42,884 nucleotides of DNA from Octopus sinensis. Lineage: Eukaryota. The stretch's first letter is position 1. Every line of letters starts with the position of its first letter. Shown piece by piece: positions 9,823-39,399 of the stretch. A program made the translations under genes and the position numbers. The stretch spans positions 1 to 42,884 of the forward strand of contig NW_021831901.1 in the NCBI RefSeq assembly GCF_006345805.1, given 5' to 3'. The notes under the pieces were generated by a model. It was not told the DNA's origin. It was given only the letters and a program-made list of their open reading frames with translations, and ran no database searches.

Positions 9823-11760
9823 CATCATTATCATCATCATCATTTAACGTCCATTTTCCATTCTGGCATGGGTTGGACGGTTTGACTGAGAACTGGTAAG
9901 CCAAAGAGCTGCACCAGATTTCAGTCTGATTTGGCATAGTTTCTACGGCTGGATGCCCTTCCTAACACCAACCACTCCAAGACTGCAGTGCGTGCTTTTT
10001 ACGTGCCACTGGCACGGGTGCCAGTAACGTGACACCGGTAAAGGTTACAACTACGATCTCAATTGGCTTGACAGGTCTTCTCAAGTAGGTATATCTCCTG
10101 AGATCTCGGTTATGTCATTGCCTCCATTAGGTCCAACGTCCGAACGGTGCTTTTTACGTCCCACTGGCACCTGTACCAATCACACGACACTGACATCGAC
10201 CAGGACTGCGATATCACATAGCTTGACAGGTCTTTTCAAGCACAACATATTGCACAACGTTCGTAGGGAGCTATTTACGTACCAGTTACGCGACACTGGC
10301 ATCAGCCATGACTACGATTTCACTTGGCTTGACAGGTCTTCTGAAGCACAGCATATCGCCAAAGGTCTCGGTCACTTGCATCCGTGAAGCTCAATATTCG
10401 AAGTTCATGCTTCACCACCTCGTCCTATGTCTTCTTGGGTCTACCTCTTCCACAGGTTCCCTCCACCGTTAGAGCGTGGTACTTGTTCACACATCTCTCA
10501 TCGTCCATACGCATCACATGACCACATGAGTGCAGTCGTCTCTCTTGAACACTACATCTGATGCCACTTACGCCCAACTTTTCTCTCAAGACGTTTACAT
10601 TCAGTCCTGTATGCATACTGACATTATACATGAAGCAAAGCATACTGTCTTCATTTCTTAGAAGCCTATACCTATCATCGACGGTCATAGTTCATGTTTC
10701 ACTGCTGTATAGTATGGCTGTTTGCACACAGTCATCATACAATCTGTCTTTTACTCTGATGGAGAGGCCCTTTGTTATCAACAGAGGTAAGAGCTCTCTG
10801 AACTTTGCCCAGCCTATTCTCGCTACTGACTTTGTCACCTAGCTAATGGAAGCTATCAACTACTTCTAGTTTTTTTCCCTTGGCATTTTATGGAGTTTAT
10901 TTTCTGTACACTTTTAATGTTAATTGTACCTGTGCACCTTTCACAAACAAAAACTATATTTCCTGTTAACTTTCCTCTGATAATTCTGCACCTATTACAT
11001 GTCCATAGCTTACACCGGTTATATTTTATGGAGTTTTTTCTGTACACTTTTAATGTTAATTGTACCTGTGCACCTTTCACAAACAAAAACTATATTTCCT
11101 GTTAACTTTCCTCTGATAATTCTGCACCTATTACATGTCCATAGCTTACACCGGTTATATTTTATGGAGTTTCTACCTACGCCTTTACCACAGATCGAGC
11201 AGGGCCATCTACCGGAAGGGATTTGTGATTTGTTTGCTCTCGTGCTTACTAAGGCTTTGGCTTTTGCTAGATTAACTCTAAGGCCCTCTGATTCTAGAGC
11301 TTGCTTCCTCGTCTGAAATTTCTTCTTTAGTTCTGATAGCCATTCAGCAATAAAAACAATGTCATCAGCATAGAGGAGCTCCCAGGAGCAGCTCGTCTTA
11401 AATTCTTGTTATTGCCTGGAGGATTATGTTAAATAAGATGGGGATGAGGACTGATTCTTGGCGAGCCCCTACTTGCATCCTAAATTCATCGCTATACTTG
11501 TTGCTAACCTTCAGCTTACTGACAGCATTCCTGTACATGGCTTGTACAGCACTCACCAATCACTCGTCTTTCCCTAGCTACATATTGATCACCAGATAAA
11601 GGAGCGAGGAACGCTGTCAAAGGCTTTCTCCATGTCGACAAAAGCCAGGTACAGGGGTTTATCTTTGGCTAGATATTTCTCCCGTCGTTGCCTAATCAGG
11701 AATATATTATCAGTCGTGCTCCTGTCTGGCACAAATCCGAAATGCTTCTCATTTACACTA
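9823..11760 (-). mobile_element. 5'-truncated RTE-clade LINE: RT domain, Cys-finger, C-terminus, 3'UTR and (GAT)n tail
   Basis: HFGFVPDRSTTDNIFLIRQRREKYLAKDKPLYLAFVDMEKAFDSVPR (RT), VSAVQAMYRNAVSK, WKQALESKGLRVNLAK, ERRLHSCGHVMRMDD..VEGTCGRGRPKKT*DEVVKHELR (RTE C-terminus). The 3'UTR contains ggttggtgttaggaagggcatccagccgtagaaac and ends in (GAT)n. Many stops. Confidence 0.93.
10885..11172. repeat. Near-perfect ~137-bp tandem duplication inside the RTE
   Basis: attttatggagttt recurs at 10885, 11023 and 11159. The two units are identical except for a short T-run difference. Confidence 0.95.
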
Positions 11761-12068
11761 TTCGGCGTATTCGAGCGGTTCCAAGCAGTGCTGTTTTCTG
11801 CAAGTGCTTGACCCTTATTGCAGCCCATATTTCTTCCACGTACTTCTCGACATTTTTGCTCGCTGTTCCCAGGGCTCCGTCTATTATTGGTACTACTGCT
11901 ACCTTTTTCATCGACCACAACTTCTTAACTTCCCAGGCTAACCTGTCATATCTCTCAACTTTTCTTTCTTCTTTATAGCATACCTTCTTATCAGTTGGGA
12001 TTGCTATATTTATGAACTAGCATAGTTTGTTTTCTTTATCAATTAAGACTGTCTGACTTTCTATTCTC
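11755..12068 (-). mobile_element. R4/Dong-type LINE fragment 1 (restriction-like endonuclease C-terminus)
   Basis: NRKSD...INIAIPTDKKVCYKEERKVERYDRLAWEVKKLWSMKKVAVVPIIDGALGT...LQKTALLGTARI matches the RKPD..IDIAxP.D..KE.K..Y..L..E..LW..VVPIxIGALG..LQKxALLGTAR RLE signature. The 5' truncation abuts (AAT)n. Confidence 0.88.
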
Positions 12069-12088
12069 TATTATTATTATTATTATTA

Positions 12089-12150
<62 letters not shown>
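12069..12150. repeat. (ATT)n microsatellite
   Basis: Direct; further tracts at 12708-12777, 14531-14589, 15230-15303, 37915-37964 and 38519-38620. Confidence 0.97.
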
Positions 12151-12705
12151 GAGTGAGAGAGCAGTTCATGTCATCAAAGTGACACTGGGGTAAAATATAC
12201 GAAGCCCAATATACCCATCATTACTACCCGTCTGATAAGGGTACACCAGGCACATGCATCACAACCATATGTGCGCGACATGGTGATCTTATATCAAGAT
12301 AAACAGCACATGACCTTGCAGGTGGGGCCCAGTTAGATTTTTCTTCAGGTTGAGTAGCCCATCCCGCTCAAAAGGTCCCCTGAATAAGGGTTGTTTAAGG
12401 ATGTTGAAAGAACCACCCATGTTTCCAGAGGTGAATTATTCAAACCCCAAAGAATCCCTCTCAACACATGGCTATGATGCTCCCCCACTACTTCTGCTCG
12501 TGATCAGAGATGCACATATCGTCAGCCACTAAGGGACATGCTCAACTGGTTAAGGTCAAACAACTGACAAGCAAATCTGTGGTATTGAGCAGAATATTTG
12601 CTGTAGCCCATCTTTTATACCAAAACAAAACAATGTACATGATAACACTTCCAATCAGTTAAGATCAGAAGCCATGAGAGCCACTGCCTGGTACTGCATC
12701 AGGGC

Positions 12706-12707
<2 letters not shown>
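12151..12707. mobile_element. Element Y copy 1: ~555-bp non-coding interspersed element embedded in (ATT)n
   Basis: Begins gagtgagagagcag and ends gtactgcatcagggca. Colinear copies at 14590-15126 and 37965-38518, all flanked by (ATT)n on both sides. Confidence 0.9.
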
Positions 12708-12772
<65 letters not shown>

Positions 12773-12777
12773 GTTAT

Positions 12778-13810
12778 AATATGAAAACTCACAGCTTATT
12801 TTGCTGGGCATGATGGAAAGTGTCAGCTGCTCACGGCCAGCAGACTAGGGTGACATTTGTTTACTGGTCATGCTTCAAGAAACCTGCAAAGAATTCTTGC
12901 AGCTCCAAGCAATTCTGATTTTGTTCAGCTGATCTTTTTCAGCCATGTTGAGTGCTGATACTTCCAAGTGCACCAATTACTATTGATATCACGTATACTC
13001 TTTTCATTGATCACAGCTTTTGTATTACCCACTTCAAATCATTATAGTTGTTTATTTTTTTCTTCTTTCACATTGATCCTGTTGTCGCTGGGGCATGTTA
13101 TGTCGATTATCATATATGCTCTTTCTTTTCTTTTCACTACAAGAATGTCCAGTTTCCGATGTCTGGTCGGATGAACACACTGGATCATTGCATCCCACAG
13201 GATTTTGCAATTCTCATTTTCACTGACTCCTTCTTGAGTTTGCTCATACCACGCGTCTCTGCTCTTTGTAGGCGGTGATTTCCACAGAGATCTCAATGGA
13301 TCGTTCTTGCCACTTTGTCATGGTGTCTTTTGCATTCGTATTGTGCTAATTTCGGGCATTCACTAACGATGTGCCATGCTGTTTCACCCCTCTCACCACA
13401 CATTCTGCATTTGTCACTATCGGTAGTATTGTCTATTCTGCATTTCATATAGTTGGTCCTTAACGCCTGTTCCTGAGCTGCGCATATGAGTGCTTCTGTC
13501 TCTCTCTTCAGGTCACACCTTCTCGTCCTCCTCCTCGTCTTCCTCCTTCTCCTTCACCTCTTCCATAATCACCCGCCCTCTTTATCCGTCTTGGCGTGCA
13601 CATCTCTTGCAAACTGACCGTACATTGTTTTATGTTCATGCTTTTTTTGTTTGTTTATTTCTTGTTTAAACTTTTCTTTCGTCACATTACTTTTAGTTTT
13701 GATTATGCAATGGCTCCAGGTCTTCAACAATGGCTCCACGGCATTTTTAATATACCACCCTAAGCTGTTTTTCTCTCCTTCGATACAGACCTGGCACATT
13801 TTTGTAACAA
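12778..13810 (-). mobile_element. R4/Dong-type LINE fragment 2 (CCHC finger, RLE, 3'UTR, (AAT)n tail)
   Basis: EKNSLGWYIKNAVEPLL..MYGQFARD, LKRETEALICAAQEQALRTN, CRMCGERGETAWHIVSEC (CCHC), WYEQTQEGVSENENCKILWD..RHRKLDI..IIDITCPSD, IVIGALG. The 3' end runs into (AAT)n. Confidence 0.92.
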
Positions 13811-14528
13811 TCCTTGCCGAGACACTCTCAACATCCTAGGGCGCGTGAAGGATAAGATATATTACTGTATGACTGAGAGCTTGGGGAGGCGAAGTGGCAG
13901 GACCAGAAGCGAAATATCTTCATGTAATACAAAACAGGCTTTTAAATGGTTAGGTCTTTTCCTAGAGTGTAGGCAGTACTTGTCAGCACAATCTTTTGGA
14001 TTTGTCCGTGACATTGTTCTCCTGGGATCTTATCTAGATGTTTCTGAATTCCCTTTTTATCACATCTAGAGTATCTACAATAGCAGGAACAGTTCCCGCT
14101 TTAAAATGCCACATCTTTTGTATTTCAATTTCAAGGTCTTTATTTTTGCTAATTTATCAAATTCCTTTACAGATATATTTTTATCAGTGGGAACACGTTT
14201 AGCTATTAATCTACAAGTATTTAATAATTATGTCTGCTCGATTAACCTGGATCGTTCTGTAGTATAGACTGGAAAATCTCAGAAGATAATGACATTCTTA
14301 CCTTCAACGACTAGCTCAGGATGATGTTCATAGCAGTAAGCAGGAGTGTTGATTTTGTAGTGTTTACATATTTTTCAATGTAAATACTGTCCTATCCCAT
14401 TGTGGCGATTTTTGTATTCGTTTGGTGTCTGCAAAGGACACCCCGAGACAAGATGGACTATTGTTTCGTAAAAGGTATCGCATAATCCGCATTTAAAGCC
14501 AGAACCGTTTTGAAGAACGTTAGCCTGG

Positions 14529-14530
<2 letters not shown>
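13811..14530 (-). mobile_element. R4/Dong-type LINE fragment 3, a different subfamily (CCHC, RLE, partial 3'UTR)
   Basis: QANVLQNGSGFKCGLCDTFYETIVHLVSGC (CCHC), EYKNRHNGIGQYLH, YEHHPELVVEGKNVI..DFPV, KDLEIEIQKMWH..TVPAIV. The 5' truncation abuts (AAT)n at 14530. Confidence 0.88.
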
Positions 14531-14589
<59 letters not shown>

Positions 14590-15126
14590 GAGTGAGAGAG
14601 CAGCGCATGCCATCAAAGTAACACTGGGGTAAAATATACGAAGCCCAGTATACCCATAAGGGAACATCAGGCACATGCATCACAACCATATGTGCGCGAC
14701 ATGGTGATCTTATATCAAGATAAACAGCGCATGACCTTGCTGGTGGGGGTCCAGTTAGAATTTTCTTCAGGTAGAGTAGCCTATTCCGCTGAAAAGGTCC
14801 CTGAATAAGGATTGTTTAAGGATGTTGAACGAAATGCCTGTTTCCGAAAGTGAATTATCCAAACCTCCGAGACCTCCCCTCAACACATGGCTATGATGCT
14901 CTCCCACTATTTCTGCTCGTGATCAGAGATGCACATATCGTCAGCCAATAAGGGACATGCTCAGCTGGTTTAAGGTCAAGCAACTGACAAGCAACTCTGA
15001 GGTATTGAACAGAATATTTGCTGAAACCAATCTTTTATACCAAGACAAAATAATATACATGATAATACTTGCAACCAGTTAAGATCAGAAGCCACGAGAT
15101 CCACTGCCTGGTACTGCATCAGAGCA
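14590..15126. mobile_element. Element Y copy 2 (small internal deletion near 14655)
   Basis: Same termini and internal sequence as 12151-12707; flanked by (ATT)n. Confidence 0.9.
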
Positions 15127-15251
15127 TATTATTATTGTTGTTGTTTTTGTTGTTTTTGTTGTTGTTGTTGTTGTTGTTGCTGCTGTTATTGTCATCATCA
15201 TCAACAACAAATAGAACAACAACAACAATAATAATAATAATATTAATATTC

Positions 15252-15304
<53 letters not shown>

Positions 15305-15508
15305 CCTTTCTACTATAGGCACAAAATTTTCGGGAAGGGGACTAGTCACTTATATCGACTCCAGTGTTCCGAACACTGGTAGTTGATTTAGCAATCCTAA
15401 AAGGATGAAAGGCAAATTCGACCTCGACGGAATTCGAACTCAGAACATGACGACGGAGGAAATGCCGCCAAACATTATATGCCCGGCGTGCTAACGATTC
15501 GTCAGCTC
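15305..15508 (-). mobile_element. tRNA-derived SINE family B
   Basis: Reverse of gagctgacgaatcgttagcacgccgggc...ttctgagttcgaattccgtcgagg (B-box-like GAGTTCGAATTCC)...gcctttcatcc...gtgcctatagtagaaagga(tta)n. Confidence 0.8.
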
Positions 15509-18052: not shown

Positions 18053-19055
18053 ATCAGGCTGAGTAAAAATGAAGCAACCATGAAGAATTTCTACCGAATT
18101 TTTGCAGAGTTCTGAATATTTAAAACATTTTTTTGCAATTGTCTGATAAAGCTGATATAAGCTTGCCTAAATGCATCAATAAATTAACGTTGATGCTTTT
18201 TTCACTGTTGTTACAATCATCTGAAATGGAACTGTTAAAGCGCGATATTCGAGCAATTTTGCTATTCAACTTTCGGTCCGCTCGAAAATGGCTTAAACGA
18301 TTTCGCAGTGAAGACCTGAGCCTTGAAGATTGTGAGTGTAGTGTACTCCCATCTGTCATCGATAACGGTCAATTAAAGACCGTCATTGAGAAAGATTCAC
18401 TCAAAACCACTCGAGAACTTCAAGTTACCCAGAAAACTGCCTGCAACCATTTACATGCGATCGGAAAATCAAAAAGCTCGACAAATGGGTATCACACGTT
18501 TTGAATGAAAATCAGAAAATGTGCAGATATGATATTTGATGGTCACTTCTTCCTTCGTCGTAACCACGCCGATCCCTTTCTCTATCGTACAGTAACTTGT
18601 GATGAAAAGCGGATTCTGTATAATAGTAAAAAACGTTCTTCGTAGTGGTTGGACCAAAATGAAGCACCGAAAACCTTTCCTAAACTCGAGCTCTTCAAAA
18701 GGAAGTTATAGTGACTGTTTGGCCGTGTACAGCTGGACGTGTCCACTATAACTTCTTAAAACCCAGAAAAACCACTATTGCAGACAGTTTGCCATTGAAA
18801 TTGCCAAAATGAACGAAAAACTACTACACCTCCGTCACAGACTGGTCACCAGAATAGGGTCAATCATTCTTCATTATAATGCTCGACCACACTTTCCACT
18901 AATGACACTCCAGAAGTTGAGGGAACTTAGCTACGAAATTTTGTCCCGAACCAACTCATTTCCCATACTTTTCCCCTACCGACTACCACTTTTTCAAACT
19001 CCGTGATGGTTTCCTGCGAGAGAAAGAGTTCAAAAATCAAACATATGTCTGAAAA
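18053..19055 (+). mobile_element. Decayed mariner (DD34D-type) transposon
   Basis: KRDIRAILLFNF..ARKWLKRFRSEDLSLED..KTTREL..NHLHAIGK..KLDKWV; VTCDEK (first D); HYNARPH (cf. HDNARPH); FSPTDYHFF (cf. SPDLAPSDYHLF). Many frameshifts. The left end tatcaggctgagtaaaaa is TIR-like; no matching right TIR was seen. Confidence 0.9.
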
Positions 19056-19409: not shown

Positions 19410-20620
19410 TTTATTTGCCTACTCATGGGGAGAATTCACAAAAAAGAAAAGACGAAGACAGGTGTTGTAAACAGCACAGAGATGTTTTAGTTTAACGATC
19501 GGAAAGTGAAAAATCTTTAACGTTTCGAGCCTACGCTCTTCCACAGAAAGGAACACAGACAGAAACAAGGAGAGAAAATAAAGAATGTGTAGTGGCCAGC
19601 GATCTATCATGGCGAATGCCGGAAAGAAGGGTCACACAAGAGGGCTAAGGAGAAGGGGAGATAATAAAGTAATGGTGATACCAAAACGAAGGTGCGCATG
19701 CGTGTATATAAGAGAGTTTGTATGTGCGTGTGGAAGAGGGCTGGTAATCTTGACGTGTGCGTGTGTGTATGTGTAGGTGTGAAAACGTGGGGCTGGGAAG
19801 TGGTCATTGCTGGTGTGTGCGTGGTGGTGTGTTGTGATGTGATGTGCTGTGTGGTATGGTGGTGTATGTAGTGCTGTGTGCTGTGGTATGATGGTGTTGC
19901 GAGGTAGGGGAGGCGAGAGTGGGGAAAGCAAGTGTGGGGTATGTGTCAAGCTGCGGGTGGGAATAGAGGTGGGGTATGTGGGTAGGCGGAGGGTGGGGTA
20001 GAGGTGGAGTATGTGGGAGTGGGTGTAATGGGTGGGGTGGGATGGGAAGGATAGGGAAGATGGGGTTGGAATGTGTAGAGGTGGGTGGGCTTACAAGGGA
20101 GGAGTGACGATGAAGGGAGTAGGAAAGGAGGGTAGGAGTGAAGAGAAGAGAGAAGGAAATTAGGAGTGAAGAGAAGAAGTAGGAGTCGGAGCAAGGGAGG
20201 AGAGGTGGGTGGGAAAAAGTAGGTTTGGGGGAGAGTCGAGGGGAGGAGAGTTGATCCTATATGGCGCAAAGGAGCGAAGAGAGAAGATTAATCATTGTTC
20301 ACGGCACAAACGGGAGTCCGGATGGCCCCTGTGCAAGGACAATCCGAACACGAACAGGTGTTGCAAAGAGTGACCGGTAGAACAGAAATGGCGCGATACC
20401 GGGGTGTCATTGCTGAGTCGGATATCTCGGAGGTGTTCCGCGAACCGGTCAGCCAAGCGGCGTCCCGTTTCTCGATGTATAGAGAAGAGCAGAGAGAGCA
20501 GGAGATGCAGGAAATGATATTGGTGAGGAGGACGGTGTTGGAGAGATAAGCATGGGCGGGAGCAGGGGAACGAGCCGGGTTGGGAGTTTGGGTTATGGAA
20601 GAAGCTGTTGACCAAGAGGA
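19410..20620 (-). mobile_element. 3' part of a Penelope-like element: GIY-YIG endonuclease remnant, pyrimidine-rich 3'UTR and hammerhead-like terminus
   Basis: [26 protein letters not shown](G)[42 protein letters not shown] (GIY-YIG). The downstream terminus ctgtggaagagcgtaggctcgaaacgttaaagatttttcactt... is shared with 32760-32915 and 27990-28060. Confidence 0.85.
19514..19550 (-). ncRNA. Minimal hammerhead-like motif (Penelope terminus type), non-canonical core
   Basis: CUUU-CUGUGGA-A-GAGC(GUAG)GCUC-GAAAC-GU-U-AAAG: 4-bp stem I, 4-bp stem II, loop-less palindromic stem III. A6 is replaced by U. Confidence 0.45.
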
Positions 20621-20671
20621 TAGACAGACAGACAGACAGACAGACAGATATATAGATAGATAGATTGATAA

Positions 20672-20716
<45 letters not shown>

Positions 20717-20721
20717 CAGAC

Positions 20722-20793
<72 letters not shown>
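20620..20793. repeat. (GATA)n/(GACA)n microsatellite
   Basis: Direct; (TCTA)n then (CATA)n also at 25630-25935. Confidence 0.97.
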
Positions 20794-21060
20794 GGTAAAT
20801 ATAGGACGGAAGATGGAATATACGACAATTTATTATTAATCAAGACAAGTGCTTGGACACATCTAGCATCGATCCCTCACGAGAGTGACACTTGACGATT
20901 GGTTCAGGAGCATCCGGCGGGACAGATGTCTCTCATCGGGTGATAAATAGACACACTTCGTTAAAATAACAGTTCCACAATGTATCTTCTTATTTCGTAA
21001 AACGAAAAGCAGCAAAAGAAAGGAAAAATCACAACTGCACAAAAAGAATATAGATATAGA

Positions 21061-26756: not shown

Positions 26757-27966
26757 CAGGGGTTGGACAAAATAATGGAAACACCTTAAAATTTCAAACA
26801 AATTTATTTTAATATGGGGTAGGACCACCTTTGGCAATAATTACAGCTTGAATTCTACGAGGTATGGACTCGTACAAAGTTTGAATTGTTTCCAAAGGAA
26901 TTTTTGTCCATTCTTCAGCTAAAATAGTCTCCAGTTCTTTTAGTGATGATGGTGGAGGATATTGACTCCTTACTTGTTTTTCTAAAATGCACCATAAATG
27001 TTCAATAATATTAAGATCTTGGGACTGCGGTGGCCAGATAAGATATTCAACTTAACTAGTATGTTCCTCGTACCGTTCAGTAATAACTTTAGCTGTGTTT
27101 CCCTCCGAAAACTGTTCCGCAACCAATAGGATGAATTTGATCAGATAAAATGCTTAAATAATCTTGACTGTCATAAAGGGAAGCGGATTTCCAAGATATA
27201 CCCCCCACACCCCACTCAGATCATCACAGATCCTCCTCCATGTTTAACAGTTGGAAGAAGGCAGTCTGGGTTAAATGCTTCTTTTGGCTGTCTCCACACG
27301 TATACTCGGCGGGTGGTCGGAAAGAATGCAAAGGATGACACGTCCGAGAAAATAACTTTCTTCTACTGCTCTAGGGACCAATTCTGTAGGTTTTTACTCC
27401 ACTCTAAACGCTTTTCAACGCTTGTTTTTGGAAGTAGTGGTTTTCTGATTGCAGCCCGCTTGTGAAATCCGGTTTTGTTCAGCTCCCGGCGGACAGTCGT
27501 TGTGGAAACTGGGTTCACGATGTGTTCATTAAGCTCTGCAGTACTTTTGGGGACTGTACTTTTTAACAATTCGCGTCAGAGACCGACAGTCCCCATCTGA
27601 AAGTTTTATTTCTCTTCCGGAGTTTTGTTTCGACGAGGAGGGTTTTCCCTCTTTCTCAAAGGCTGTCATTACTTTCGAGACAGTACTACTTGATACACTA
27701 AAGATTTCGGCTGTTTGCGTTACGCTAGCGCCTGCCATACGAGCACCAACAAGTTGACCTCTTTGAAAGTCCGATAGATCTGTCATATTGATGAATTTAT
27801 TTACCTTTTTCTGATGATATCTGAAAAGAAACAGCAATTTTAGCAAAACATATTAAGCAACACTAATAATAAATAAAAAAAAACAAAACTAAGCAAGCTT
27901 TTGACGGTTTTATAGATATTTCAAAATTATGATGCTAGGTGTCTCCATCATTTTGACCAACCCCTG
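26757..27966 (-). mobile_element. Tc1-family transposon, both TIRs and TA TSD present, transposase decayed with an internal deletion
   Basis: TA|CAGGGGTTGGACAAAATAATGGAAACACCT ... AGGTGTCTCCATCATTTTGACCAACCCCTG|TA. Translation: MTDLSDFQRGQLVGAR (paired-like HTH), TVRRELNKTGFHKRAAIRKPLL, KVIFSD, PTVKHGGGSVM, WPPQSQDLNIIEHLW, RRIQAVIIAKGGPTPY*. The segment around the second catalytic D is missing. Confidence 0.95.
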
Positions 27967-37180: not shown

Positions 37181-37910
37181 CCCAATTATAATTATAATTA
37201 TAATAATGATAATAATTCATATTACTATAATTAGAATGAGGTGAGCTGGCAGAATCGTTAGCACGCTGGACGAAACGCTTAGCTGTATTTCGCCTGTCAC
37301 TACATTCTGAGTTCACATTCGGCCGAGATCGATTTAGCCTTTCATCCCTTCGAAGTCGATAAATTAAGTACCAGTGAATCGCTAGGATCGATGTTATCAA
37401 CTAATTCCCTCCCCAAAAGTTTCAGGCCTTGTTCCTTTAGTAGTAAGGATCATTATTATAATAAAAAAGGCGGCGAGCTGACAGAATCGTTAGCACGCTG
37501 GAGGAAATGCTTCGCTACATTCTGAGTTCAAATTCGGCCGTGGTCGACTTTGCCTTTCATCCTTTCGGTGTCGATAAAATAAGTACCAGTTTGGTATTAG
37601 TGTCGATCTAATCGACTGGCCCCACTCCCTCAAAATTTCATGCCCTGAGGCTATAGTAGACAGGATTATTATTATCATTAGAAGGCGGCGAGCTGGCAGG
37701 TTCGTTAGCTGGCCGGGTGGAAAGCTTAGCAGTATTCCGTCTCTCTTCGTGTTCTGAGTTCAAATTCGGCCGAGGTCGACTTTGCATTTCATCCTTCCGA
37801 GGCCGATAAATTAAGTACCAGTGAAACATGGGAGTCAATGAATTTTCGACTAGTTCCTACTAATAATAATTCTAATAATAATAATAATCTTTTCTACCTT
37901 TGTAGAAAAG

Positions 37911-37944
<34 letters not shown>

Positions 37945-37964
37945 TATTATTATTATTATTATTA

Positions 37965-38518
37965 GAGTGAGAGAGCAGTGCATGTCACCAACGTAACACT
38001 GGGGTAAAATATTCGAAGCCCAGTATACCCATCATGACTATACGTCTGATAAGGGAACACCAGGCAGATGCATCACAACCATATGTGCGCGACATGGTGA
38101 TCTCATATCAAGATAAACAGCGCATGACCTTGCAGGTGGGGGCCCAGTTAGACTTTTCTTCTGGTCGAGTAGCCCATCCCGCTCAAAAGGTCCCTGAATA
38201 AGGATTGTTTAAGGATGTTGAACGAGCCACCCATGTTTCCAAATGTGAACTATCCAAACCTCCAAGAATTCCTTTCAACACATGGCTATGATGCTCCCCC
38301 ACTGCTTCTGCTTGTGATCAGAGATGAACATATCGTCAGCCACTGAAGGACATGGTCAACTGGTTAAGATCAAACAACTGACAAGCAAATCTGTGGTATT
38401 GAGCAGAATATTTGCTGTAGCCCATCTTTTATACCAAGACAAAACAATGTACATAATACTTCCAATCTGTTAAGATCATGAGCCATGAGAGCCACTGTCT
38501 GTTACTGCATCGAGGCGA
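37965..38518. mobile_element. Element Y copy 3
   Basis: Same termini (gagtgagagagcag ... tactgcatcgaggc) and (ATT)n flanks as copies 1 and 2. Confidence 0.9.
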
Positions 38519-38519
38519 C

Positions 38520-38568
<49 letters not shown>

Positions 38569-39399
38569 CATCATCATCATCATCATTATCATCATCATTA
38601 TCATTATTATTATTATTTAGATGGCAAGCTGTCAGAATCGTTAGCCCTGAAAGAAATGGTTGGCGGTATTTCGCCTGTCGCTACATCCTGAGTTCAAATT
38701 CTGCCGAGGTCGACTTTGCCATTTATCTTTTTGTGGTTGATAAAAAAAGTACCAGTTGATGTAATCGACTCATCTCCTACCCCCCCCCCCCAAATTGCTG
38801 CCCTTGTGGTAAATTATGAAACCATTATAAGGCAGCGTTAGCATGCTGGGCGAAATGCTTAGCGGTTTCTCGTCTCCTAATACGTTCTGAGTTCATATTC
38901 GTCCGAAGTCGACGTTGTCTTTCACCCTTCGGGGTCGATAAATTAAGTACCAGTTGCATACTGGGGTCGATCTAATCGACTGGTCCATTCCCCACCAAAC
39001 ATAATGACAGTGTGGATGGTATGGGTTGTTGTGAAGTTAGTGATTACTGAGAGGATGGTATTTGTGTAAGGGTTTGGGACTGGATCTCACAGAGGCAATG
39101 AGAGGAGACCGAGACCTTTGGACATCTGCTGGCAGAAACGTTAGCACGCCGGGCGAAATACTTAGCGGTATTTCATGTCTTTACGTTCTGAGTTCAAATT
39201 CCGCTGACGTTGACTTTGCCTTTCATCCTTTCGGAGGGGTGGGGGGGTCGATAAATTAAGTACCAGTTGCATACTGGGTCGATCGAATCGACTGGCACCC
39301 TCCCCGCCAAAAACATTGACAATGAATATGGTATGGGTTGTTGTGAAGTTAGTGATTATTGACGGGATGGTATTTGTGTAAGTGTTTGAGATGGTAGTG

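What the first reader, a model, noticed from the sequence alone, without database searches (positions are those of the whole stretch)
12151..12707. Element Y: a fixed-length, non-coding, (TAA)n-specific element, candidate non-autonomous partner of Dong-like LINEs
Seen: three full-length copies (12151, 14590, 37965) have the same two termini and (ATT)n on both sides, with the same polarity to the microsatellite. Two alternate with Dong fragments. There is no tRNA A/B box, TIR, ORF or Helitron end. Several local stems occur (CTGGG/CCCAG, TACCC/GGGTA, GCACAT/ATGTGC). The minus-strand 3' end (gtgtcactttgatggcatgcactgc) weakly resembles the Dong fragment 2 3'UTR (ctgacactttccatcatgcccagc). Inference: a site-specific SINE-like element of unknown promoter type mobilised by the RLE machinery. 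The absence of 5' truncation suggests a defined, possibly self-processed, RNA end. This is my best candidate for an uncharacterised system here, though it may already sit unnamed in repeat libraries.
Basis: partly seen in the sequence, partly recalled or inferred. Interest (0 to 1): 0.7.

Follow-up and report, generated by a model that had tools for sequence, protein, structure and literature searches.

The report
TAA-repeat-specific non-coding octopus retroposon
Element Y is a real, about 555-bp non-coding mobile repeat of octopus genomes that always sits, full length and in one polarity, inside (TAA)n microsatellites; it is probably copied by the TAA-specific Dong-like LINEs that share those sites, but no sequence link to them was found.

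Summary
Three copies (12151-12707, 14590-15127, 37965-38513; 87-92% identical) share both termini, lie in one polarity and have (TAA)n on both sides. A fourth full-length copy lies in an Octopus bimaculoides intron, and a fifth is inferred from a spurious O. bimaculoides protein model. No fragment was found in about 128 kb of octopus DNA, and nothing in two other cephalopod loci.

Y has no conserved ORF, tRNA or Rfam match, or terminal inverted repeat. The neighbouring "Dong" fragments are true restriction-like-endonuclease LINEs (profile match to the R2 CCHC + RLE domain, E = 2.7e-7). They end on (TAA)n in the same polarity and phase as Y.

The minus-strand RNA folds better than shuffles in 3 of 4 copies (z -2.7 to -3.7). 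The plus strand does not.

The 3'-end resemblance to Dong fragment 2 is at chance level. No ribozyme, HDV-like or other, is detectable at the 5' end, although Bombyx Dong has one.

Best reading, confidence about 0.5: a non-autonomous, TAA-specific retroposon mobilised in trans by a Dong-type LINE. Main rival: the opposite strand is the RNA, with an (ATT)n tail like the octopus tRNA-SINE. Moderately interesting; probably sits unnamed among "Unknown" repeats.

The parts
12151..12707 (-). Y copy 1, full length (557 bp). It is the copy closest to all the others, so probably the youngest.
   Evidence: pairwise identities
14590..15127 (-). Y copy 2, full length apart from an 18-bp internal deletion that removes the tip of a predicted hairpin
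37965..38513 (-). Y copy 3, full length. It is inserted in the (ATT)n tail that follows a plus-strand tRNA-derived SINE.
12708..12777 (-). (TAA)n array. It forms the 5' flank of Y1 and the 3' tail or target of Dong-like fragment 2.
12069..12150 (-). (TAA)n array, 27 units. It forms the 3' flank of Y1 and the 5' junction of Dong-like fragment 3.
14530..14589 (-). (TAA)n array, 20 units. It forms the 3' flank of Y2 and the 5' junction of Dong-like fragment A.
15128..15200 (-). Degenerate (TAA/CAA)n array forming the 5' flank of Y2
37911..37964 (-). (TAA)n array, 18 units, forming the 3' flank of Y3. On the plus strand it is the (ATT)n tail of a SINE.
38514..38617 (-). (TAA)n/(TGA)n array forming the 5' flank of Y3
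12778..13883 (-). Dong-like (RLE LINE) fragment 2. It is 5'-truncated and decayed, carries a CCHC + RLE remnant and an intact 3' end abutting (TAA)n.
14096..14530 (-). Dong-like fragment A. It is 5'-truncated and starts in the CCHC region directly after (TAA)n.
11750..12068 (-). Dong-like fragment 3. It is 5'-truncated and has 87 aa of the RLE C-terminus without stops. Its 3' part abuts an RTE-type LINE.

Best explanation
Y is a family of short (about 555 bp) non-coding, non-autonomous retroposons of Octopus genomes.

Proposed mechanism:
1. An RNA corresponding to the window's minus strand, 5' GCCCUGAUGCAG ... CUCUCUCACUC 3', is made. It is highly structured. It is probably not a Pol III product.
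2. The RNA is copied into the genome by target-primed reverse transcription at nicks inside (TAA)n.(TTA)n microsatellites, always in one polarity.
3. The enzyme is supplied in trans by the TAA-specific LINEs of the Dong/R4 kind, which carry a restriction-like endonuclease and occupy the same arrays.

Many of the target arrays are themselves the (ATT)n tails of the abundant tRNA-derived SINE.

Shown: the family exists; its length and termini are fixed; all copies seen are embedded in TAA arrays in one polarity; it co-occurs with true RLE LINEs and has the same junction phase; RNA structure is asymmetric between the strands.

Inferred: retroposition by TPRT, the sense strand, and above all the identity of the partner.
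For: Copies and termini:
- Three window copies plus one O. bimaculoides copy are all full length with identical termini. There are no fragments in about 128 kb of octopus DNA.
- A fifth copy with the same 5' terminus and at least 7 TAA units is inferred from the UniRef model P0070.
- Flanks beyond the microsatellites are unrelated between copies, so this is transposition and not segmental duplication.

Target and junctions:
- TAA arrays make up only 0.5-1.5% of the DNA.
- The GCCC-side junction is variable (AA|AT, AAT|AT, TAA|GTC). The CACTC-side junction is nearly constant (C|AATAAT in 3 of 4). This is what TPRT predicts for 5' versus 3' junctions.
- The O. bimaculoides copy has 3 TAA units on the GCCC side and at least 10 on the CACTC side.

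RNA structure:
- Minus-strand RNA gives z = -3.16, -2.73 and -3.7 in 3 of 4 copies. The plus strand gives +0.49, +0.49 and -1.72.
- A 17-bp long-range helix contains 3 G.U pairs, which would be C.A mismatches on the other strand.

Link to Dong-like LINEs:
- The neighbouring LINE fragments carry CCHC + RLE (R2 protein, 9nl3_A, E = 2.7e-7).
- They end C|AATAAT on (TAA)n in the same polarity.
- Dong elements, including one from a snail, are known TAA-specific LINEs (PMC3812793). Dong-R4 LINEs are abundant in octopus (PMC8967140, PMC9115989).
- The other LINE type in the window (RTE-like) ends in (ATG)n, not TAA.
Against: - There is no sequence similarity between Y and the only intact Dong-like 3' end available. 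tblastn of 69 Dong-like proteins against Y finds only chance-level matches (best E 0.36).
- No HDV-like or other ribozyme is found at the 5' end, although B. mori Dong has one that cleaves at the TAA/Dong junction (PMC3774820).
- The way the RNA is made is unknown. No Pol III head is present and there are three TTTT runs in the sense strand.
- Covariation is not significant with four close copies.
- Only five copies were seen. No full-length octopus Dong could be fetched.
Confidence: 0.5

Rival explanations
1. Opposite orientation. The RNA is the window's plus strand (5' GAGUGAGAGAGCAG ... CAUCAGGGCAU 3') and carries an (AUU)n tail like the local tRNA-derived SINE. Y is mobilised by that SINE's unidentified LINE partner. 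The TAA/ATT association comes from annealing of the microsatellite tail to existing (ATT)n tails, not from an RLE endonuclease.
For: - The tRNA-SINE copies end in '...tagtagaaagg' + (ATT)n on their own sense strand. About half of their heads are preceded by (ATT)n.
- On this reading Y3 lies head-to-tail between two SINEs in one (ATT)n array.
- Because both flanks are the same repeat, the flanks alone do not fix the orientation.
- The relaxed ribozyme descriptor gave somewhat more hits on this strand (9 against 3.1 expected; 10% of shuffles reach it).
Against: - Plus-strand RNA shows no excess structure, while the minus strand does.
- The O. bimaculoides copy would have a tail of only 3 units and a 5' flank of more than 10 units.
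- The putative 3' junction would be the more variable one.
- There is no similarity between the plus-sense 3' end of Y and SINE 3' ends.
Confidence: 0.2
2. Y is a SIDE in the strict sense: an internally deleted Dong whose 5' part is the Dong 5' UTR or ribozyme and whose 3' part is the Dong 3' UTR, derived from a Dong family that is not present in the window.
For: - It has the same target, polarity and junction phase as the Dong-like fragments.
- There is precedent in R2 SIDEs (PMC3414825) and in the Dong 5' ribozyme that cleaves at the TAA junction (PMC3774820).
- A defined 5' end is seen in 5 of 5 copies.
Against: - No HDV-like fold above chance and no Rfam ribozyme.
- No similarity to the available Dong-like 3' UTR.
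- No element sharing only one Y terminus in any locus held.
Confidence: 0.12
3. Y is not an element of its own. It is a piece (a UTR, a solo terminal repeat or an internal module) of a longer or composite repeat, or a DNA-level duplicate of a microsatellite-flanked segment.
For: Only five copies were examined, and 'Unknown' repeats are plentiful in cephalopod libraries (PMC8967140).
Against: - Both ends abut (TAA)n in every copy and the flanks beyond are unrelated.
- The sharp termini are the same in two genomic contexts and in the O. bimaculoides locus.
- No TIR, no TG...CA ends with TSD, and no Helitron ends.
- No partial copies.
Confidence: 0.05

Closest known systems
R2 SIDEs (Short Internally Deleted Elements) of Drosophila (Eickbush & Eickbush 2012, PMC3414825)
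   Same: Both are short, non-coding and non-autonomous. Both are found only at the specific target of an RLE-type LINE, in the LINE's orientation, with 5' junction variation typical of TPRT.
   Different: SIDEs are recognisably made of the R2 5' ribozyme plus the R2 3' UTR. Y shows no ribozyme and no similarity to the Dong-like 3' end available. The SIDE target is the 28S gene and they are co-transcribed with rRNA. Y sits in dispersed microsatellites.
Dong / R4-clade LINEs (B. mori Dong, DongAg, DongBg of the snail Biomphalaria; PMC3812793, PMC3774820)
   Same: Insertion into (TAA)n in a fixed polarity. The window's own Dong-like fragments end C|AATAAT, as Y does.
   Different: Dong encodes RT + CCHC + RLE and, in Bombyx, has an active HDV-like ribozyme at its 5' end. 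Y encodes nothing and has no detectable ribozyme. Dong copies in the window are all 5'-truncated, whereas Y copies are all full length.
Classical SINEs, including the octopus tRNA-derived SINE present in the window
   Same: Short, non-coding and full length, dependent on a LINE, with a simple-repeat tail.
   Different: Y has no tRNA, 7SL, 5S or snRNA head and has internal TTTT runs. The octopus SINE carries (ATT)n on its sense strand and is not confined to microsatellites. All Y copies seen have the repeat on both sides.
Microsatellite-associated interspersed repeats of insects (for example mini-me in Diptera and the RTE-linked microsatellite families of Lepidoptera, PMC2887409); the comparison partly rests on my own knowledge
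   Same: Short non-coding repeats that make the flanks of many microsatellite loci alike.
   Different: Those elements generate or carry the microsatellite. Y appears to be inserted into pre-existing arrays in a fixed polarity.

Membership tests
Classical SINE | 5' head derived from a Pol III-transcribed RNA (tRNA, 7SL, 5S, snRNA) with an internal promoter | tested here: not met
   ARAGORN finds no tRNA. Rfam finds nothing at gathering score, and at E<=10 only low-complexity noise.
Classical SINE | Transcript compatible with Pol III (no internal T4+ terminators) | tested here: not met
   The minus-sense consensus has TTTT at positions 78, 334 and 512. The other strand has two such runs.
Classical SINE | 3' tail shared with a partner LINE | tested here: inconclusive
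   No similarity to the one intact Dong-like 3' end or to SINE 3' ends. No other octopus LINE 3' ends could be obtained.
SIDE-type derivative of an RLE LINE | Same target site and orientation as the autonomous LINE | tested here: met
   Five of 5 copies lie in (TAA)n in one polarity. The Dong-like fragments have the same polarity and 3' junction phase.
SIDE-type derivative of an RLE LINE | 5' end is the LINE's HDV-like ribozyme | tested here: not met
   Rfam is negative. The strict topology scan gives 0 hits in Y1-Y3. The relaxed scan gives 2 hits against 4.3 expected on the minus strand. No wet test was possible.
SIDE-type derivative of an RLE LINE | 3' end is the LINE's 3' UTR | tested here: inconclusive
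   Not similar to the fragment 2 3' UTR. The 3' ends of fragments A and 3 are missing, and no full-length octopus Dong was reachable.
Dong/R4-clade LINE (the neighbouring fragments) | C-terminal CCHC finger plus PD-(D/E)xK restriction-like endonuclease | tested here: met
   A profile of 20 homologues hits R2 proteins 9nl3_A and 9dou_A over CCHC + RLE, E = 2.7e-7 and 5.3e-7. The window fragments align to these proteins.
Dong/R4-clade LINE (Y itself) | Encodes RT/RLE | tested here: not met
   No conserved ORF. tblastn of 69 Dong-like proteins against Y finds only chance-level matches (best E 0.36).
MITE / Helitron / solo LTR | Terminal inverted repeats, or TC...CTRR ends, or TG...CA ends with TSD | tested here: not met
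   No terminal inverted repeat. The termini and flanks read directly show none of these.
SINE superfamilies with conserved cores (Ceph, Meta, Deu, V, and so on) | Shared central domain | not testable with these tools

The most novel reading that the evidence does not exclude
Y is a new kind of LINE parasite: a structured RNA with no Pol III head. It hijacks a microsatellite-specific RLE LINE without sharing its 3' UTR sequence, either by structural mimicry or through the TAA tail alone. Its uniform 5' end would be set by a promoter or processing signal of a type not yet described for non-autonomous retroposons.
Probability: 0.15. Interest if true: 0.65.

Novelty: new variant of a known kind. 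Interest (0 to 1): 0.4.

Why it matters
If Y is mobilised by a Dong-type enzyme, it would be the first non-autonomous partner described for the R4/Dong clade, to my knowledge and within the papers searched. It would also be a natural "minimal RNA" for TAA-directed target-primed reverse transcription. That is of interest now that R2-type enzymes are studied structurally and as site-specific integration tools (PMC10499050).

It would also help to explain why many octopus TAA microsatellite loci share flanking sequence. It shows how SINE tails, Dong LINEs and Y build compound arrays.

If it is only another tail-annealing retroposon, it is an ordinary unnamed repeat.

Tried and rejected
1. Rfam at gathering score on the whole window, and at E<=10 on Y1. 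Only low-complexity noise came back.
2. Strict and relaxed HDV-like topology scans on both strands. They gave none or chance-level hits.
3. Local alignment with shuffles of the Y 3' end against the Dong fragment 2 3' UTR, and a motif count. Both were at chance level. The same was true against SINE 3' ends.
4. tblastn of 69 Dong-like proteins against Y: only chance-level matches (best E 0.36).
5. Consensus folding and pair counts on four copies. There is no significant covariation and too little divergence to expect any.
6. Two metagenome scans with Y motifs gave 0 hits. The second pattern was badly chosen, because it carried an extra W.
7. Getting more octopus DNA:
- The look-up of P0072 worked and gave L002.
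- P0070, P0071 and P0200 are not on record.
- The O. vulgaris and O. sinensis orthologue gene is over 100 kb, so no DNA was returned.
- A search of representatives with an RT fragment gave only UniRef-only octopus proteins.
- As a result, no empty-site comparison and no full-length octopus Dong could be obtained.
8. L001 (an unrelated ENA contig), L003 (an unnamed cephalopod) and L004 (cuttlefish) hold no Y.
9. Segmental duplication is rejected, because the flanks are unrelated.
10. MITE, Helitron and LTR readings are rejected.

Full report
**What is there.** The window is repeat-rich, AT-rich animal DNA full of microsatellites, tRNA-derived SINEs and LINE debris. blastn with 12151-12707 finds three full-length copies on one strand and nothing else: 12151-12707, 37965-38511 (91.7%) and 14590-15127 (86.8%, one 18-bp internal deletion). 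Aligned on the minus strand, they share the termini (A)TGCCCTGATGCAG ... GCACTGCTCTCTCACTC, and each is embedded in (TAA)n of the same polarity. TAA arrays cover 1.5% of the window, so the association is far beyond chance.

**Organism and further copies.**
- Y has no protein, so I used the spurious peptides of its six frames as a query.
- The only hits among 5.8 billion proteins were three Octopus bimaculoides models. Two are UniRef models that read Y antisense. One is an NCBI PP2A-B55 isoform that reads the last 130 nt of Y and its (AAT)n as an exon.
- The PP2A-B55 locus (L002, CM046622.1) holds one full-length copy, 89% identical. It has 'aaataataatat' on the GCCC side and at least 10 AAT units on the CACTC side.
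- P0070 implies a fifth copy with the same GCCC terminus next to at least 7 TAA units.
- A profile of the four copies finds no partial or diverged copy in the window or L002. It finds nothing in an unrelated contig (L001), an unnamed cephalopod locus (L003) or the cuttlefish orthologous locus (L004).
- Pairwise identities are 84-92%. Y1 is the closest to all the others, so the family was active over some time.
- Flanks beyond the microsatellites are unrelated between copies, which excludes segmental duplication.

**The neighbours.**
- Three minus-strand fragments (11750-12068, 12778-13883, 14096-14530) match C-terminal parts of LINE proteins.
- A profile of 20 homologues hits solved R2 proteins over the CCHC finger and the restriction-like endonuclease domain (9nl3_A, E = 2.7e-7). 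They are therefore RLE LINEs.
- All three are 5'-truncated, and each starts or ends on (TAA)n in the same polarity as Y. The one intact 3' end reads ...TATAAC|AATAAT, the same junction phase as ...CACTC|AATAAT in Y.
- TAA-specific Dong elements are known from insects and a snail (PMC3812793). Dong-R4 LINEs are abundant in octopus, and a full-length consensus exists in the O. bimaculoides library (PMC8967140, PMC9115989).
- The other LINE at this spot is RTE-like (RVT_1) and ends in (ATG)n.
- The tRNA-derived SINE ends in (ATT)n on its own sense strand, so many arrays are SINE tails. Y3 sits in one.

**Anatomy of Y.**
- No ORF is conserved between copies.
- There is no tRNA and no Rfam family even at E<=10.
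- There is no terminal inverted repeat.
- tblastn of Dong-like proteins against Y gives only chance-level matches (best E 0.36).
- The minus-sense consensus has three TTTT runs and the plus sense has two, so a 550-nt Pol III transcript is unlikely on either strand.
- Minus-strand RNA folds much better than dinucleotide shuffles in three of four copies (z -3.16, -2.73, -3.7; the deleted, most diverged copy gives -0.44). The plus strand does not (+0.49, +0.49, -1.72, -0.17).
- Part of this asymmetry comes from a 17-bp long-range helix with three G.U pairs, both arms of which are almost invariant.
- With four close copies, covariation is not significant. The structure is a pointer to the RNA strand, not a proven fold.
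- The GCCC-side junction varies (three types in five copies), while the CACTC-side junction is nearly constant.
- Together with the short GCCC-side array in L002, these points favour the minus strand as the RNA.

**Tests of the Dong link.**
The alignment scores 12-14 against 14.4 +/- 2.3 for shuffles, and the motif occurs twice against 0.87 expected.
- No element in any locus held shares just one Y terminus.
- The 'self-processed end' idea has a real precedent. Bombyx Dong carries an HDV-like ribozyme that cleaves exactly at the (TAA)n/Dong junction (PMC3774820), and R2 SIDEs keep the R2 ribozyme (PMC3414825).
- In Y, however, a strict topology scan finds nothing in the window copies. A relaxed scan modelled on the published R2 and Dong tolerances gives 2 candidates against 4.3 expected on the minus strand and 9 against 3.1 on the plus strand (10% of shuffles reach it).
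- Full length in all copies is in any case normal for a 550-nt retroposon RNA.

**Reading.**
- The best-supported account is a non-autonomous retroposon that enters (TAA)n by target-primed reverse transcription in a fixed polarity, most likely using the Dong-type RLE LINE that shares the arrays.
- That partnership is inferred from target, polarity and junction phase only. I give it a confidence of 0.5.
- The main rival (0.2) is that the plus strand is the RNA, with an (AUU)n tail like the tRNA-SINE, moved by that SINE's partner.
- A strict SIDE origin from an unseen Dong family (0.12) is a sub-variant of the main reading.
- A fragment of a longer repeat (0.05) is unlikely.

**Comparison and novelty.**
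- Y works like an R2 SIDE or a stringent SINE. It fails the defining tests of both that could be run: no Pol III head, no LINE ribozyme, and no shared 3' end with the LINE in hand.
- I therefore file it as a new variant of a known kind (LINE-dependent, target-specific non-autonomous retroposon).
- It very probably already sits among the 'Unknown' repeats of cephalopod libraries, which published surveys discard (PMC8967140).
- Interest is moderate. The decisive work, a genome-wide census and comparison with full-length octopus Dong ends, is easy for anyone with the assemblies but could not be done with the tools at hand.

Noticed in passing
window 37233-37378, 37520-37667, 37680-37910, 38623-38756 (+), 15305-15497 (-); L002 several: The octopus tRNA-derived SINE ends '...tagtagaaagg' followed by (ATT)n on its own sense strand. 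This is the opposite microsatellite polarity to the Dong fragments and Y. About half of the SINE heads are preceded by another (ATT)n, so SINE tails seed many of the TAA arrays that Dong and Y then occupy.
   Followed up: partly
L002:70970-71160 (O. bimaculoides CM046622.1): The NCBI PP2A B55 isoform model (P0072) translates the 3' part of a Y copy and its (AAT)n (…CTALSLNNNNNNNNNNNDNND…) as coding sequence joined to a real exon. This is probably a retained-intron or annotation artefact. Two UniRef models (P0070, P0071) also contain Y antisense peptides.
   Followed up: partly
window ~9700-11747 (-): An RTE-type LINE fragment (RVT_1 plus a PHD-like Cys cluster) has a 136-bp tandem duplication at 10885-11172 and an (ATG)n-type 3' tail. 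It abuts the truncated 3' side of Dong-like fragment 3. Its closest relatives are O. bimaculoides UniRef proteins at 57-65% identity.
   Followed up: partly
window 15135-15304: The microsatellite polarity switches. (TTA/TTG)n runs into (CAA/TAA)n near 15195-15226. The second array is the tail of a minus-strand SINE, and the first is the 5' flank of Y2.
   Followed up: no
window 18133-18504 (+), 27529-27846 (-), 20292-20843 (-): ORF remnants that look like mariner/Tc1-type transposase N-termini and a GIY-YIG (Penelope-like) domain. This was judged by eye from the translations only.
   Followed up: no
L001:7533-7673 and 10001-10780: In an unrelated ENA contig, a Dong-like LINE (70% nt identity to window fragment 2) also has a (TAA)n/(TGA)n array at its truncated 5' side. 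This is consistent with TAA targeting in that lineage too.
   Followed up: no
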